Shown piece by piece: positions 21,622 through 64,000 of a stretch of 64,000 nucleotides of DNA. The notes under the pieces are model-generated. The model did not search any database and had not been told where the DNA came from. It saw only the letters and a program-made list of their open reading frames with translations. The stretch is from Zygnema circumcarinatum SAG 698-1b (Eukaryota > Plantae > Zygnematophyceae): NCBI GenBank assembly GCA_037447605.1, contig CM074804.1, positions 2,170,001 to 2,234,000 on the forward strand. Reading direction: 5' to 3'. Positions within the stretch are counted from its first letter, which is position 1. Each line of letters begins with the position of its first letter. The translations under genes and the position numbers were made by a program.

Positions 21622-21945
21622 AGGAGGGAGGGAGGGAGGGAGGGAGGAAGGGAGGGAGGNNNNNNNNNNGAGGGAGGGAGGGAGGGAGGGAGGGAGGGAG
21701 GGAGCAGATGGCGACGCAGCACCACCCTGCCACTGCCAGGAAGGCGCCGGGAGAGGGAGAGGGAGAGGGAGAGGGAGGGGGAGGGGGAGGTGCCCGTCCC
21801 CTCCCGGCCCGGCCCGGCCCGGCCACGCGCGCGTACCGTACAGCCATCCATGCGGCCATGCACGCATGCCTGCATTCTTGCGAGCGCCACGCGACCGACC
21901 GACCGACTGAAAGACTGACTGACTTTCTGACTGACTGACTGACTG
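21589..21945. repeat. Microsatellite cluster (GGCA)n, (GGGA)n, (GGGAGA)n, (GACC/GACT)n in the divergent promoter, with a 10-N gap at 21660-21669
   Basis: Directly visible; the assembly gap lies inside the (GGGA)n tract. Confidence 0.92.
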
Positions 21946-58900: not shown

Positions 58901-61527
58901 CTCCTTCATGGTTGTCTATTCTTACTTGATGCATTGTCAACGTTTGAAGGTTGCATGAGTACAGGAAACCTATGTCCTTGCATGTGGACTAGCAAAGATC
59001 TTCCTGGGCATCATCAGCTGTTCTATGCAGTGTTTGCAGCATAACCTATGCGCTGCCAGCTGCTGTACCTTTGAAGTTAGCAGGGCTATTGCGATTGCTG
59101 GTTTTCTCCTTTCCCGCTTGCTATCCTTTCTTGCCCTGATATGGGGTCGCGGATGTTGTTCATGTAGGTGGCCGGCAGCGTGCTGCCCCCATGGGCGGTG
59201 GCGAGAATTGCGGCGCTGCAGGTGAGGGCTGCAGACTGCCTGAGGTGCCTCACCTGTCTGCGTCCGAACATGACTTGTAAATGGGCTGATGTTCTGCACA
59301 AGCTGTAGGCAGACCTGTCGGGAAACTTAACTTGTTGACAGTGCATTCAATCCAGGAAGGGGAATGACGAAATCATCCGATGATGGGCTGATTAGCAGTT
59401 TTTTCAAATGATGTGTTTGAGATTTCTATGGCAAAAACTGGCACAAACTGATTGCAGAGGTTTCTGTTGAAGCAGAGCCGCACAGCTCGTCAGTGGAGGA
59501 CTCACGGGGAGCCTGCTGTCAATTTCGCGCTGAAGGAGGTGAGAGAGCTTCAGTCCTTTGTTGCTTGGACGCAGTCATTCGTAGGCAATACAATCAAGCG
59601 TGACATATGCGTAAAAGGTCCATCCTTCACTGTAATTTTTCCTTCTTGTTAGCTTTTATGAGACAGACCCGGAAGTTGCTTGTATTTCTCATTTATCTCG
59701 CGTTGTGAAAGCTATATTCCCTTGCACTAGCTCAATAGAAACGAGCACTCGACCTTTGAAAAAATTCTGGTTAGTTCAAATGACTCAGTGTACGTTTGGA
59801 AAATGGTGGTAGGCTGCTCGCGGTGGCGCGGCAGTGCAGAAATGGGCGGATCCCTACATCTCTGCCATGCGAGCGGTGCGGTTACAAACCTTTCTCCTCC
59901 CGCAACTAGCAGCTGTCATGCTGCAGGCGGCCAAACGAGTACTGAAACTTGCGTTTGAAATGTCTTTTATCTCAACTTAGGTCACGCCTGTGTGCTTGTG
60001 CAATGGTTTTGGAAACTATTATATTATATGGTCCCATGTCTCATACTAGTCTATTTTCCAGGCTCTATTTCAGTGGCAAGGAAACCCGATGATTGGAGGC
60101 AGAGCAATTTCGTGCTAACCGGGATGAGAGGTCGTATGACTTCTGGCAGGCCGCCGGGCAATCAATTCAAGCAGCGGCAGATTTCCTTCAGCCTGCCAAG
60201 CAGGCCCTGCAGCAGGTAGGACCCATCCATCTATGCGCAATGCTCAGATTGTGGCGTGCCCTATTTACAATAAGGCCATCCCAAGGCAGTCAGGCCGCTT
60301 TGTGTGAGGGTGACAAGCATCCATTGCACTTCATAGCACGAGGATATTTCTGTTTGCCGACTATGCTCCTAGGTGGCTGCCTGCGTCTGCAGAAGGTGGC
60401 TCCCGTGCTGCAGAAGAGCTGGAATAAGACGGCCACTGTGCTGAGGCCGCATGTGGAGGCTGCCCATGGGCATGCGCTGCGCGGCTATCAGGCGGCTGCA
60501 GACTTCATCACTCCGCACGCCATAAAGCTAGCAAAGATGAGCGAGCCGTATGTGCAGGTGTGTTTCTTGACTGCAAGAGAGCCAGGGGCTCTGCGGAAAT
60601 GATCCGTAGAAGTTGGATTTTCACAAACACCACTAGTTCCCCACGTTGTATATAGAATATGGACGACTCTCCTTTCCCAGTCGTTTTCAGTTACTGTCGG
60701 ACTGGAGCTCTCAATGATGGCCTCAGGATGCAGTGAAGTGTCGTGACTGACCTCCAGTTAAAGTACATGCACAGGTGGTCGGCGAAAGGGTGGGTCCCCA
60801 TGCGGCAAGGGTAAAAAGCGCCCTAGGGCCCCATGTGGAGGCTGCGCGGGGGGTGGCCTCGGCCTACCACGAGCATCTCCAGGAGCGCGTGAGGACGGTG
60901 GTGCAGGAGCATGGCGGCGCTATCAGTCCCTCGCTCGTCTGGCATGCGGTGAGGCGTTGTGAGAATCTCGCATTGACCTCTTTGGTTTAGCGCTCTTAAA
61001 GAGCCCGCAAACCTCACACAGGCTTGGGGGGGAGGGGGAGGGGGTGGCAGGCGACTGTCCTGCTTGTGCTGCCGTTGTTTCTTGTCATTATCATCAGCTG
61101 GCCCGTTTTGAGGTGAGTGTACCTGCTCTCTCTTTGCTGGGAAGGAGAGCGATTTCTGGTCTGGGGTTCATTTGTGGTTTTTAGGGTGGAGCTAGAATTC
61201 CATGCACAATTCACCGTCGTGCCGCTGCATATACTACTAGATATCTACTCAGACGGACCAAGAAAATAAGGGATTTCTGTGAGGCGAGAAGAGGAGCAGC
61301 TGGGCAACTAATGCATGCTTGCGCACACAGCTTTTGGAAGCGCATAGTGTAGGGCAAAAGTGATACCGTAGGGGACAAAGCCGCTGGCGTGAAGATGCAA
61401 GGGTACCCGCTGACACGCCATGGCGAGGTTGCTCTTGTGCAGAGGTCTGCGGAAGGAGGGCGAGAAGGCAGCAAAGCGCACTCACACCGTTGCCCACAAG
61501 AAGCACCGGCGACCTCGCCGCGAGTAG
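55901..61527 (+). CDS. Signal-peptide, long coiled-coil, C-terminal TM protein (At2g24420/At4g31340 myosin heavy chain-related family)
   Basis: N-terminal signal FVAVALLLGGRGVQG, many short E/K/A-rich exons, VAGSVLPPW, QWRTHGEPAV, QKWADPY, TM segment ATVLLVLPLFLVIIISWPVL and basic tail THTVAHKKHRRPRRE* (TAG 61525-61527). Confidence 0.75.
58863..59167 (+). other. GC-AG intron in the coiled-coil gene
   Basis: CAGAAG|GCATGT...TGTAG|GTG GCC gives KAVELQK|VAGSVLPPW in phase 0; the nearby GT donor is out of phase. Confidence 0.65.
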
Positions 61528-61790
61528 AAGGCCAAGGAAAATTGAATGCTTTGAATGTTTTGCAGAACTCTCACACCATTTCTTGAAGGCATCTTCTTAA
61601 TGCTGTGTAAATTCCTATTCTGTATTGCAGTACAACCCATTAACCTGAACTGGAGCAATGCTGTTGCGTCCTTTCCTAATGTTCAAAATGATGAAAAAGT
61701 GACAGAAATGCTACTCGAATTCAGACCAATGGTCCTAAATGAGCAACTGAAGGCCATCCACTAAAAATTAATAACCGTTGCTAGCAGCGG

Positions 61791-63791
61791 CTACACCCCA
61801 GGACTAAGCGTCTCGCTCCCTACGCGCCCGATGGTGTGGTCGGTGTTCCCCACCCTCACCCCGCGGAGGGCTGCATCGCGTCGAACGCGGGTTCCGTCCT
61901 CCGTGGGCGGCGAGGGCGGAGGTGCAGAGTACGGCTTGAGGGCGCTGAGACGGCCGTGCGTCATCTGCAGGGCCTTGGTCGTGGGGCTGAGCAGGATGAG
62001 GTCCTCGAACTCGCGGTCCCAGAACACGTCCCCGTCGTGGACGCTGTACAGCGCGTGCCCGAACACGGGCTGCATGGACGACCGCTCGAAGGCGTTCACC
62101 GTGAGGCTGAATGATGCATCCTCGGCCAGCAGCGTCTGCCCCCTCCCCCGCCCCCGACAATTGCTGCAATATGGTCACTCGTGTCACTTAAAATGGATCC
62201 ACTCTTTAAACGTGAGAACAAGGTGAGCCCCTGCCAGAAATTTCGGCCGACGATACTCTTCCCCAATTTCGAAGAGAAAGTAAGGACGTTCATTAGGACA
62301 TCAAAGAAACCCCAAAAGCCAGGCATACCTCTTGATCGCATCGCCCATACAGCGGGCTGCTTTCATCGATGATGTGTCGTAGCAGCATGCCGTAGCGCAG
62401 ATATGACGCCTCCGCACGCACTAGAGGCAGCTTAGCATGCATCGCAAAGTGGGAATCCTGGCCGGGCACTTTCACAAAGCGGCGCATGGAGAGGTCGAAC
62501 TTGGCGTCAATCAAACAGTGTGGACTCGGACCAACCAGCACACAGCGAGCCAAGAACGCCCTGCACCCACCTGCCCCCACCCTCCTCTCACAGTGACTTC
62601 CTGGCTCCCACCATTCACTCTGCCTGAAGCCGCCTGCACAAGGGAAAATGAGGTCGATACAGCCGGTACGCCTTTGTTGGCCTATGCTATTGTTTGCATT
62701 GTACATTGGAATGGGGACAAATGCCACAGAGCAAGCCACGGAAAGTGCTGCAGCAAGAAGGATCGAGTATGGGTCATGGCTTGCCCTCCACGCACTTTGG
62801 CTTGGGTCCACTCCCTTCATCGCTGAATGCATTAGCTAAAGTGTCCTGCGCAATCAGGGCCACCTTCGAGAAGCGAACTGGTGGAACAGGTTGTGCAAGT
62901 CGCTGAAACACTGGATAGCCCATACACACAAAGCCCAATAAGCTGGAGAAAATACATAAGGCTGAATGAGAATAGACGGGCAAGAGTAAGGGTCTAAGTG
63001 CATCTCAGTCATACGAGAGAATATCCAGACGCCCCAGGACTGGATAAAGATAGACAAAAGGAAACGGGGAGAGGAGGGAGGAGGGAGGAAGAGCTAGCTT
63101 CAATAGCTTGCCATGCTGGCGGTAAGAAGCAAACTTGAAAAAAGGAACTTTTCTTTTTTTGTTTGTAAGTTTTCAAAAAAAAAAGAAATTGCCCTAAAAG
63201 ACGCAGCTTTACTAATTTTATAAGGTAACTCAGATTTCAGTCGGCAATTTAAGTTCGACAAAGGATGAATAGAAAAATATGTCAAAGAGCGAGGTTTCTA
63301 ATCTTTTTCTTTCTTTTTCTACTTGCTCATCAATTTTTTTCTTTTATCTTTTCTGAAAGCTTGTTCTCGTGGTATAAATAATTTGCTTTTCCTGATAAAG
63401 CTTTTGCAAATGGAAAAATTGCCCGGTCTGTAATTGATTGACGTGATGAGAGATGTGATGATGTGAAAGGTGACGACAAACCTGCTCCGCTGAGAAAGAC
63501 AAAGAGGAGCTGTGCACAGAGGGTGTTCAGATTTGCGATAAGGACTGCATAGGGTGACTGCACTTCCACTGCGCCGCCTCCTAAAGTGGTAGACAGTGAG
63601 AGACTGTAGAAGAAGACGTGAAGCCGTGTCTCGCCCACCACATCTACTATGGCTCGCGTCCACCCACTTGGCTGATAGCCTCCATAAGCAATGCGCAGAC
63701 CTTCAGGATCGAGAAGATACAGGCCAGTGAAAACGAGGCTCAGAAGCGGAGCCCCCGAAAGTAAACAGAGGAAGAACGTGGGTAAAGACAT
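61791..63791 (-). CDS. Inward-rectifier (Kir/IRK-type) potassium channel homologue, 5'-partial
   Basis: M1 MSLPTFFLCLLSGAPLLSLVFTGLYLL; pore FFYSLSLSTTLGGG; M2 YAVLIANLNTLCAQLLFVFLSGA|VFQRLAQP...VRFSKVALI; cytoplasmic domain CLIDAKFDL, LLRHIIDESSPLYG and FWDREFEDLI, matching the Kir HxIDExSPLY and IxWGHRFxDI motifs. TAG at 61793-61791. The N-terminal exon(s) probably lie beyond the window. Confidence 0.85.
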
Positions 63792-64000
63792 CTGCAAAAA
63801 CAGAACAGAAAGAACCATTCCAAGTTCAATAGCACGCCCAGCACGGGTGCAAAAAGGAACAGTCTCTCTCCACAGTTCGCCTACAGCTGCATACATTCCA
63901 CGATCACAGAAAAGAGCAGCTCTGCGCCCCACACGTCCGCAACACGCCGCCAATTCCCCCCCACAAAAGCAGCCCTAACATTCGCAGTTTCCGCCTGAGG

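What the first reader, a model, noticed from the sequence alone, without database searches (positions are those of the whole stretch)
63482..63791. Kir-type channel with a non-canonical selectivity filter (TTLGGG instead of TTIGYG)
Seen: the pore exon reads FFYSLSLSTTLGGGAVEVQSPY, with codons ACC ACT TTA GGA GGC GGC at 63590-63573 inside an intact frame that has M1, M2 and a Kir cytoplasmic domain. Established: K+ selectivity in Kir and KirBac channels depends on TxG(Y/F)G, and the pore helix normally has a Glu (ETQTTIGYG) pairing with a post-filter Arg in eukaryotic Kir. Here the Tyr is Gly, the Glu is absent and no Arg follows the filter. Inference: this may be a non-selective or differently selective channel, or a regulatory subunit. 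To my knowledge true IRK-domain channels are not part of the angiosperm repertoire, so it may mark a lineage-restricted channel clade.
Basis: partly seen in the sequence, partly recalled or inferred. Interest (0 to 1): 0.75.

Follow-up and report, generated by a model that had tools for sequence, protein, structure and literature searches.

The report
Algal Kir-like channel, odd pore filter
This is a real, expressed gene of a streptophyte alga for a protein built like a Kir/KirBac potassium channel but with the filter TTLGGG in place of the potassium-selecting signature; none of its relatives examined, from basal green algae to Ginkgo, has that signature, and the ion they pass has never been measured.

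Summary
Observation confirmed. The minus-strand exon 63791-63482 reads exactly as described, with ACC ACT TTA GGA GGC GGC at 63590-63573. RNA-type contigs from four studies carry this exon without a single difference and show GT..AG splicing.

The gene is a divergent member of the Kir/KirBac superfamily. No Pfam model hits any single exon. A profile of 28 relatives matches KirBac1.1/3.1 at about E 5e-22, and predicted structures match KirBac. That profile alignment places T-L-G-G-G on T-V-G-Y-G and a Ser on the pore-helix Glu.

The odd filter is a family trait. None of about 90 relatives examined has GYG or GFG. Most have TTFGG; one subfamily has STGLQPE. Named members run from Chlorokybus, Klebsormidium and zygnematophytes to mosses, liverworts, lycophytes, ferns and Ginkgo. 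No named member is an angiosperm. [quoted passage not shown]

It is under purifying selection: 27 of 28 invariant positions kept, dN 0.34, synonymous sites saturated. Relaxed K+ selectivity is inferred, not tested. One alternative acceptor, 10 nt upstream, gives a premature stop.

The scan also noted two other Kir-type genes elsewhere in this genome; neither has been followed up.

The parts
63792..64000 (-). 3' part of the upstream intron. The exon(s) for the N-terminus and slide helix lie beyond the window end.
   Evidence: table 7: all four runs have contigs that continue past 63791 with letters that lie nowhere in 63792-64000. Their reverse complement reads LYHLYTHMLR, which matches LFHLYVLTLR just before the M1 exon in the orthologue P0070.
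63482..63791 (-). Exon encoding M1, turret, pore helix, filter and M2 (103 codons plus 1 base, phase 1 at its 3' end).
   Evidence: exact 310-nt RNA contig pieces, 0 differences. It scores 115 bits on positions 25-130 of the family profile. AF2 gives pLDDT 80.9. Foldseek top hits are Kir/KirBac transmembrane domains, TM-score 0.70.
63573..63590 (-). Filter-equivalent codons: ACC ACT TTA GGA GGC GGC = T T L G G G.
   Evidence: The family profile to KirBac1.1 alignment places T-(F/L)-G-G-x on T-V-G-Y-G. No variant appears in RNA contigs.
62911..63481 (-). Intron (GT..AG), retained in one assembled contig (X15).
   Evidence: joint 62910|63482 in X7, X9 and X18. X15 record 1 is contiguous across 62793-63791.
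62796..62910 (-). Exon for the end of M2, the gate Phe and the KirBac-like short C-linker (V-FQRLAQPVPPVRFSK...).
   Evidence: It scores 27 bits on profile positions 132-160.
62561..62795 (-). Intron of the productive isoform. A second acceptor 10 nt upstream (exon start 62570) shifts the frame and leads to a stop after 20 codons.
   Evidence: joint 62560|62796 in X7; joint 62570|62796 in X18 and X15; the 62570 form reads K-WVQGVLGSLCAGWSESTLFD-stop. The 62560 form reads K-AFLARCVLVGP, matching FPKAFLVRCVLAGP of P0070.
62329..62560 (-). Exon for the first half of the Kir-type cytoplasmic domain, including RHIIDESSPLYG.
   Evidence: It scores 99 bits on profile positions 171-242. The best PDB hits of this ORF are KirBac1.1 at E 0.05, on the same motif.
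62136..62328 (-). Intron (GT..AG, phase 0).
   Evidence: joint 62135|62329 in all four runs.
61791..62135 (-). Last coding exon: the second half of the cytoplasmic domain plus a low-complexity tail. Stop codon at 61793-61791. The 3' UTR continues to lower coordinates.
   Evidence: It scores 83 bits on profile positions 246-313. RNA contigs are continuous over 61441-62135.

Best explanation
The locus is a transcribed, spliced, selectively constrained gene for a subunit with the Kir/KirBac architecture. The parts in order are: a slide helix (outside the window), M1, pore helix, filter loop, M2 with the conserved bundle-crossing Phe, a short KirBac-type linker, and a beta-rich IRK_C-type cytoplasmic domain.

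It belongs to a family found so far only in streptophytes. The first cloned members are the moss calmodulin-binding 'transporter-like' proteins MCamb1/2. No member examined has the K+ signature T-x-G-Y/F-G. This gene and its closest orthologue carry T-L-G-G-G; most relatives carry T-F-G-G-(S/A/T).

Shown here: identity, expression, splicing, fold, the filter alignment and conservation.

Inferred: four subunits form a gated cation pore. Its filter lacks the aromatic side chain and the pore-helix Glu that brace a canonical K+ filter. It is therefore probably less K+-selective and passes monovalent cations more generally. Precedents are the NirBac Kir homologues and NaK/CNG/HCN-type pores. With Phe rather than an acidic residue at the M2 'rectification controller' position, strong polyamine rectification is not expected.

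I put identity at about 0.9. The relaxed-selectivity channel reading, to which the confidence value refers, is at about 0.5.
For: - Sequence and codons.
- RNA: exon 63482-63791 without differences in four studies, and GT..AG joints 63482|62910, 62796|62560 (or 62570) and 62329|62135.
- Family size: only 68 relatives at E<=1e-3 among 1.84 billion representatives, the best 54-64% identical.
- Collinearity: the four exons map in order on the family profile at 115, 27, 99 and 83 bits.
- Kir homology: the family profile matches KirBac1.1/3.1 at E 5e-22 to 1e-19 over nearly full length, and eukaryotic Kir at 1e-9 to 1e-5.
- Pfam: IRK_C passes its cut-off in 4 of 10 relatives.
- Fold: AF2 of the orthologue core has pLDDT 88.4, and Foldseek's top hit is KirBac3.1 at E 2.7e-23. 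The window's own pore exon folds as M1-P-M2, and its top 20 structural hits are all Kir/KirBac. Protein-language-model neighbours are IRK transmembrane-domain clusters (0.88, 181 shared features).
- Filter: the KirBac alignment gives S-L-S-T-T-(F/L)-G-G-x against E-T-L-A-T-V-G-Y-G. No GYG or GFG occurs in about 90 family sequences.
- Constraint: 27 of 28 invariant and 32 of 34 near-invariant family positions are kept, including the G-A-V-F-x-R-x-x-x-P gate and linker. Against the orthologue's CDS, dN is 0.34 with synonymous sites saturated (pS 0.84).
- Precedents: NirBac channels are non-selective (PMC4607889).
Against: - No electrophysiology or flux data exist for any member in the literature I could search.
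- No Pfam model hits any single exon of the window, even at E<=1.
- A profile of the transmembrane/pore region alone has no significant match to any solved channel. The filter alignment therefore rests on continuity with M2, the linker and the cytoplasmic domain, and on predicted structure.
- TbIRK, a Kir homologue without the signature, is still about 8-fold K+-selective (PMC5429665). Loss of GYG therefore does not by itself prove loss of selectivity.
- In two of the four RNA runs the assembled junction uses the acceptor at 62570, which gives a premature stop. The productive junction was seen in only one run.
- The N-terminus is outside the window.
- The tetramer was not modelled.
Confidence: 0.5

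Rival explanations
1. It is a K+-selective channel despite the odd filter. Stacked backbone carbonyls of T-L-G-G-G would still form enough K+ sites, so the protein works as an ordinary, weakly rectifying K+ leak or uptake channel.
For: TbIRK (filter GGYVG) keeps a K+/Na+ selectivity of about 8 (PMC5429665). This gene and its orthologue keep the Thr and both Gly positions of T-x-G-x-G; nearly all other relatives have lost the last Gly (one transcript fragment reads TAMGGG). The P-loop is predicted as a pore helix followed by an extended loop, as in K+ channels.
Against: The aromatic residue and the pore-helix Glu that stabilise a canonical filter are both missing. Other Kir-fold proteins with altered P-loops (NirBac) are non-selective (PMC4607889). 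The family as a whole tolerates filters with no Gly pair at all, such as STGLQPE. That is hard to reconcile with a conserved need for K+ selectivity.
Confidence: 0.25
2. It does not conduct on its own. It is either a modulatory subunit that co-assembles with paralogues (the same genome is noted to hold a TTFGG-type and another Kir-type gene), or a Kir-fold protein with a non-channel role such as a membrane-anchored sensor or scaffold.
For: The scan's notes list two further Kir-type genes in this genome (unchecked). The moss members were found as calmodulin binders, not through transport activity (PMC4532166). The filter varies strongly between subfamilies.
Against: The M2 helix, the bundle-crossing Phe and the linker are invariant or nearly so across the family. 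Within each subfamily the P-loop is itself strongly conserved: SLSTTFGG in one, SLSTGLQPE in another. This is the pattern expected of a working, gated pore, not of a relic.
Confidence: 0.15
3. The locus is decaying or mainly unproductive. Transcripts are mostly mis-spliced (premature-stop isoform, retained intron) and no full-length protein is made.
For: The 62570 acceptor, which leads to a premature stop, is the assembled form in X18 and X15. X15 also retains intron 62911-63481.
Against: All four in-window exons are open. 27 of 28 invariant family positions are kept. dN is far below the saturated synonymous divergence. The in-frame junction exists in RNA (X7) and reproduces the orthologue's sequence across the junction. 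Contigs cannot rank isoform abundance (header).
Confidence: 0.07

Closest known systems
KirBac1.1 / KirBac3.1 (prokaryotic inward rectifiers; PDB 1p7b, 7swj, 1xl4 and others)
   Same: The order of parts is the same: slide helix, M1, pore helix, filter, M2, short linker and beta-rich cytoplasmic domain. The family profile matches at E 5e-22 over nearly full length. Foldseek gives E 2.7e-23 and a target-normalised TM-score up to 0.86. The motifs G-x-V-F-A-R-x-x-x-P and H-V-I-D-E-S-S-P-L-x-G are shared.
   Different: The filter is T-L-G-G-G, not T-V-G-Y-G. The pore-helix Glu is Ser. M1 and the P-loop are so diverged that a profile of the transmembrane region alone finds no solved channel. There is a longer turret with an extra helix. 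The gene is eukaryotic, nuclear and contains introns.
[quoted passage not shown]
   Same: It belongs to the same protein family. Its cluster representative matches the window's pore exon at E 1.4e-10. The S-L-S-T-T-x-G-G P-loop, M2, linker and cytoplasmic domain are the same.
   Different: The moss proteins have T-T-F-G-G-S-P and a long N-terminal extension with a basic R-W-R-R-L type motif. The closest orthologue of the window gene has only a short N-terminus without that motif. The window's own N-terminus is not in the window. They fall in different subfamilies on the tree. I could not read the 2004 paper.
NirBac channels (Zubcevic et al. 2015, PMC4607889)
   Same: Both have Kir/KirBac architecture with a non-canonical P-loop. 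NirBac is the experimental precedent that such proteins can be functional, non-selective cation channels.
   Different: NirBac proteins are bacterial, and their P-loops are described as unrelated to any known filter. Here the loop still resembles T-x-G-x-G. No relationship beyond the shared superfamily was shown.
TbIRK of Trypanosoma brucei (PMC5429665)
   Same: It is a eukaryotic Kir homologue without the K+ signature sequence.
   Different: Its filter is GGYVG. It sits in acidocalcisomes and has a measured K+/Na+ selectivity of about 8. It was not among the sequence hits of the window gene.
Animal Kir1-7 channels
   Same: Same superfamily and fold.
   Different: The match is much weaker than to KirBac (E 1e-9 to 1e-5). 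There is no T-I-G-Y/F-G, no E...R pore salt-bridge pair, no P-K-K-R type PIP2 linker and no acidic M2 rectification residue (Phe instead). The last three points come from my own reading of the alignment against textbook Kir2.1 positions.

Membership tests
Kir/KirBac superfamily (TC 1.A.2, IRK-C) | Two transmembrane helices flanking a pore helix and filter loop | tested here: met
   The AF2 model of window exon A shows helices at 3-26, 54-68 and 80-102 with a loop at 69-74. Its top structural hits are all Kir/KirBac transmembrane domains, TM-score 0.70 and rmsd 3.0-3.1 Å.
Kir/KirBac superfamily (TC 1.A.2, IRK-C) | Kir-type beta-rich cytoplasmic domain (Pfam IRK_C, PF17655) directly after M2 | tested here: met
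   The family profile matches KirBac at E 5e-22 through the whole domain. IRK_C is above its cut-off in 4 of 10 relatives at 24.9-33.8 bits. Window exons score 99 and 83 bits on that part of the profile. The window ORF's best PDB hit is KirBac1.1 at E 0.05. Single exons do not reach Pfam's threshold.
Kir/KirBac superfamily (TC 1.A.2, IRK-C) | K+ signature T-x-G-Y/F-G in the P-loop | tested here: not met
   The window has T-L-G-G-G. No family sequence has GYG or GFG.
Kir/KirBac superfamily (TC 1.A.2, IRK-C) | Pfam IRK transmembrane model (PF01007) at its gathering score | tested here: not met
   No hit for the window exon. The best relatives reach 11.7-13.8 bits against a cut-off of 22.7.
Kir/KirBac superfamily (TC 1.A.2, IRK-C) | Tetrameric assembly, K+ conduction and inward rectification | not testable with these tools
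   No multimer modelling or electrophysiology was available.
Streptophyte MCamb / Kir-like family (IRK_C-domain 'hypothetical proteins' of algae, bryophytes, lycophytes, ferns and Ginkgo) | Full-length collinear sequence similarity to the family profile | tested here: met
   The four exons map to profile positions 25-130, 132-160, 171-242 and 246-313 at 115, 27, 99 and 83 bits. They are 61.5% identical to P0070 over 301 aligned residues.
Streptophyte MCamb / Kir-like family (IRK_C-domain 'hypothetical proteins' of algae, bryophytes, lycophytes, ferns and Ginkgo) | Conserved P-loop S-L-S-T-T-(F/L)-G-G and M2/linker A-N-x-N-x-L ... F-V-F-L-S-G-A-V-F-x-R-x-x-Q-P | tested here: met
   The window differs only in having L for F and a third Gly, a combination it shares with its orthologue P0070.
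Streptophyte MCamb / Kir-like family (IRK_C-domain 'hypothetical proteins' of algae, bryophytes, lycophytes, ferns and Ginkgo) | Calmodulin binding (the property by which MCamb1/2 were isolated) | not testable with these tools
   The N-terminus is outside the window. The orthologue P0070 lacks the basic R-W-R-R-L type motif seen in land-plant and Chlorokybus members. That this motif is the calmodulin-binding site is my inference.
NirBac | Bacterial KirBac homologue with a P-loop unrelated to any K+ filter; non-selective flux | tested here: not met
   The gene is eukaryotic and its P-loop is still alignable to T-x-G-x-G. No NirBac-like bacterial proteins appeared among the hits. NirBac serves as a functional analogy only.

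The most novel reading that the evidence does not exclude
The whole streptophyte family (three ancient subfamilies with P-loops TT(F/L)GG or STGLQPE) is a eukaryotic counterpart of NirBac. These would be Kir-fold, gated, non-selective and possibly divalent-permeable cation channels. In the long-N-terminus subfamily they would be wired to Ca2+/calmodulin and to ABA, cold and osmotic stress. The family appears to have been lost before or within the angiosperm lineage. In this reading the TTLGGG pair in zygnematophyte-type algae is a partial step back towards a K+-type filter, and the 10-nt alternative acceptor sets how much full-length subunit is made.
Probability: 0.3. Interest if true: 0.7.

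Novelty: new member of a known kind. Interest (0 to 1): 0.5.

Why it matters
Plant K+ channel inventories are built around Shaker, TPK/KCO and related types. A Kir-fold family that runs from the deepest streptophyte algae to gymnosperms is almost absent from that literature. None of its members examined has the K+ signature, and its only cloned members were isolated as stress-induced calmodulin binders. Measuring what these pores conduct would show how a K+ filter can be remodelled inside an otherwise conserved Kir scaffold. It could also assign a gene family to some of the non-selective cation conductances of early-diverging plants. The TTLGGG versus TTFGGS contrast offers a natural pair for swap experiments.

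Tried and rejected
- Pfam on each exon or ORF piece gave no hit even at E<=1.
- phmmer of the pore exon against PDB gave only a spurious phage-protein hit at E 0.29. The last exon gave only chance hits.
- A profile of the transmembrane/pore region alone against PDB gave nothing below E 1.6. Sequence alone therefore cannot tie the pore module to solved K+ channels.
- Several of my own sequence-based guesses were overturned by the RNA joints:
  - acceptors at 62961 or 62942 (the real one is 62910);
  - a small extra exon around 62571-62630 (it does not exist);
  - an upstream exon inside 63882-64000 (the real one lies beyond the window).
- dN/dS as a ratio could not be computed. Synonymous sites are saturated (pS 0.84), so only dN and a bound from exon A (about 0.1) are given.
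- Literature searches for a description of the family as channels (Kir or Kir-like with streptophyte, Selaginella or Klebsormidium; the Pfam accessions) found nothing on it. Only the MCamb name led to citations, and the original 2004 paper is not held.
- The search of earlier findings by words returned nothing useful.
- The organism is coded in the run table. I infer only 'streptophyte alga, zygnematophyte-like' from the tree and earlier notes.
Full report
**1. The observation**

On the minus strand an exon runs from 63791 to 63482. It follows a polypyrimidine tract and an AG, and it ends before GTTTGT. It is open throughout and reads M1, turret, pore helix, then S-L-S-L-S-T-T-L-G-G-G-A-V-E-V-Q-S-P-Y and M2.

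Contigs of four public runs from four studies (X7, X9, X18, X15) were laid on 60001-64000. Three of them (X18, X7, X9) hold the exon as an exact 310-nt piece. X15 covers it inside one longer contig that retains the downstream intron. No run shows any differing letter. These runs behave as RNA, because their contigs skip GT..AG introns. The Gly codon at the 'Tyr' position is therefore real and transcribed.

**2. Gene model**

The RNA joints give, on the minus strand:
- exon 63791-63482;
- intron 63481-62911;
- exon 62910-62796;
- an intron ending at either of two acceptors (next exon starts at 62570 or 62560);
- exon to 62329;
- intron 62328-62136;
- last exon from 62135, with the stop at 61793-61791.

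Only the 62560 acceptor keeps the frame. It reads K-AFLARCVLVGP, which reproduces FPKAFLVRCVLAGP of the closest orthologue. The 62570 acceptor adds 10 nt and runs into a stop after 20 codons. The 62570 form is the assembled junction in X18 and X15. The 62560 form was seen in X7. X15 also retains the 571-nt intron. Contigs cannot rank isoforms, so their ratio is open.

The exon upstream of 63791 is not in the window. In all four runs the contigs continue with letters that fit nowhere in 63792-64000. Their reverse complement reads LYHLYTHMLR, the counterpart of LFHLYVLTLR in the orthologue. My own earlier guesses for splice sites from sequence alone were wrong and are listed under Tried and rejected.

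**3. What it is**

Single exons are too diverged for curated models. Pfam gives nothing at E<=1. The pore exon has no meaningful PDB match. The ORF holding the third exon hits KirBac1.1 only at E 0.05, on H-I-I-D-E-S-S-P-L-Y-G.

An exhaustive HMMER search of 1.84 billion representatives with the pore exon found just 68 proteins at E<=1e-3, the best 54-64% identical, and no canonical Kir. So this is a small, separate family. The four exons map collinearly on a profile of 28 full-length members (A1) at 115, 27, 99 and 83 bits.

That profile matches KirBac1.1 and KirBac3.1 at E 5e-22 to 1e-19 over almost the whole length. It matches animal Kir channels at 1e-9 to 1e-5. Pfam IRK_C passes its cut-off in 4 of 10 members. 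The IRK transmembrane model never does; the best score is 13.8 bits against a cut-off of 22.7.

The AlphaFold model of the orthologue core (pLDDT 88.4) matches KirBac3.1 at Foldseek E 2.7e-23. The model of the window's own pore exon (pLDDT 80.9) has Kir/KirBac transmembrane domains as all of its top 20 hits, with TM-score 0.70 and rmsd about 3 Å, although Foldseek E is only 5e-3. Protein-language-model neighbours are IRK transmembrane clusters.

One caveat applies. A profile of the transmembrane/pore part alone finds no solved channel. The residue-level filter alignment therefore depends on the continuous alignment through M2 and the linker, and on the predicted structure.

**4. The filter**

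In the profile to KirBac1.1 alignment, family S-L-S-L-S-T-T-(F/L)-G-G-x lies on S-V-E-T-L-A-T-V-G-Y-G. In the window protein T69-L70-G71-G72-G73 therefore corresponds to T-V-G-Y-G. The pore-helix Glu is Ser65. No Arg follows the filter.

They are not peculiar to this gene, however. Among about 90 family sequences tabulated none has GYG or GFG.
- Most have T-T-F-G-G-(S/A/T).
- A well-supported subfamily has S-T-G-L-(Q/E)-P-(E/D), one residue shorter.
- Rarer forms are TTFNGT, TMYGGS, TSYGGS, TTFAGS and TTLGCE.
- TTLGGG occurs only in the window gene and its orthologue cluster (P0070/P0006).

**5. Who has it**

Named members come from:
- streptophyte algae: Chlorokybus, Klebsormidium, Mesotaenium, Spirogloea, Closterium;
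- bryophytes: Physcomitrium, Ceratodon, Marchantia paleacea, Riccia, Calypogeia, Nothoceros;
- lycophytes: Selaginella, Diphasiastrum;
- ferns: Ceratopteris, Adiantum;
- a gymnosperm: Ginkgo.

A conifer transcript named after the moss protein is mentioned in PMC4519895. No named member is an angiosperm or a chlorophyte. Many clusters are anonymous transcript fragments, so absence is not proven. The next-best hit of the profile in the word-indexed search is a bacterial (Chitinophagaceae) channel with T-T-V-G-Y-G at E 1.9e-9.

On a tree of the pore-exon region (34 rows; fragments with fewer than 85 filled columns were left out), the window groups as follows:
- with P0070, support 97/86;
- then with two transcriptome sequences, 96/90;
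- then with Mesotaenium, 89/73.

This fits earlier notes that the genome is a zygnematophyte-like streptophyte alga.

**6. Prior knowledge**

[quoted passage not shown] Reviews cite it as MCamb1/2, calmodulin-binding membrane transporter-like proteins induced by cold, osmotic stress and ABA (Takezawa & Minami 2004; PMC4532166, PMC8655846). I could not read the original paper. UniProt labels several members automatically as IRK_C-domain proteins. I found no paper that treats the family as channels or discusses its filter.

The family is therefore known but barely characterised. The window gene is a new member of its short-N-terminus algal branch.

**7. Is it functional?**

All in-window exons are open. 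27 of 28 invariant and 32 of 34 near-invariant family positions are kept. The one miss is a Pro displaced by one residue in M1. Against the orthologue's coding sequence (L001), dN is 0.34 while synonymous sites are saturated (pS 0.84). Exon A alone gives a ratio of about 0.1. Together with the correctly spliced RNA, this argues against a decaying pseudogene. The frequent premature-stop junction leaves room for regulated or noisy unproductive splicing.

**8. Mechanism**

Shown here: Kir/KirBac fold; a conserved M2; the Phe that aligns with the KirBac bundle-crossing gate in G-A-V-F-x-R; a short KirBac-type linker; and a conserved cytoplasmic domain.

Inferred:
- It forms a tetrameric gated cation pore.
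- The filter lacks the aromatic side chain and the pore-helix Glu that hold a canonical K+ filter rigid. Relaxed selectivity among monovalent cations is therefore the most likely outcome, as measured for NirBac (PMC4607889).
- TbIRK shows that moderate K+ selectivity can survive without the signature (PMC5429665), so that rival stays alive.
- Reading the alignment against textbook Kir2.1 positions (my own knowledge), the M2 'rectification controller' is Phe, so strong polyamine block is not expected.

**10. Verdict**

The structural interpretation is largely correct. The functional interpretation is plausible but untested. The feature characterises an old streptophyte family, not a single gene. 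Interest is moderate (0.5).

Noticed in passing
window 62560-62570 (minus strand): There are two AG acceptors 10 nt apart. The upstream one (exon start 62570) is the assembled junction in runs X18 and X15 and causes a frameshift with a stop after 20 codons. The downstream one (62560), seen in X7, keeps the conserved frame. This may be regulated unproductive splicing. X7 and X9 also have a contig end at 62783 joined to 62541-62557, which fits no canonical splice site.
   Followed up: partly
window 60149-61800 (plus strand): A convergent, apparently highly covered gene has GT..AG introns at 60212-60388, 60555-60771, 60948-61049 and 61111-61440. Its exons encode repeated A-A-A-D-F-(L/I)-x-P and H-V-E-A-A type helical segments and one hydrophobic helix. 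Its 3' end overlaps that of the Kir-like gene, so single assembled contigs (for example X15, 3522 nt) run through both genes.
   Followed up: partly
relatives P0001, P0002, P0010, P0011, P0016, P0025, P0036: Many database 'proteins' of the family from transcriptomes end in F-V-F-L-S-G-A-G followed by unrelated residues. This is read-through into an intron at the same phase-1 position as the window's 63482 donor. The intron position is therefore conserved across the family, and its retention is common.
   Followed up: no
relatives P0110, P0077, P0094, P0017, P0019, P0023: The long-N-terminus subfamily (Chlorokybus to Ginkgo) shares a basic R-x-R-W-(K/R/H)-(R/K)-L motif and a G-R-K-G-M-E-G-L-L-V-(R/K)-Q box before the slide helix. 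A second subfamily shares an acidic S-D-D-E-F-E-x-Y-x-T-S-D-L-P-E-F-(R/K)-G box. These are candidate regulatory sites; the first may bind calmodulin.
   Followed up: no
relative P0018 (Adiantum): This gene model fuses the first two thirds of a family member to retrotransposon integrase and chromodomain-like sequence. It is probably a transposon insertion or an annotation artefact.
   Followed up: no
window 21660-21669: A run of 10 N marks an assembly gap. It is the only one in the window.
   Followed up: no
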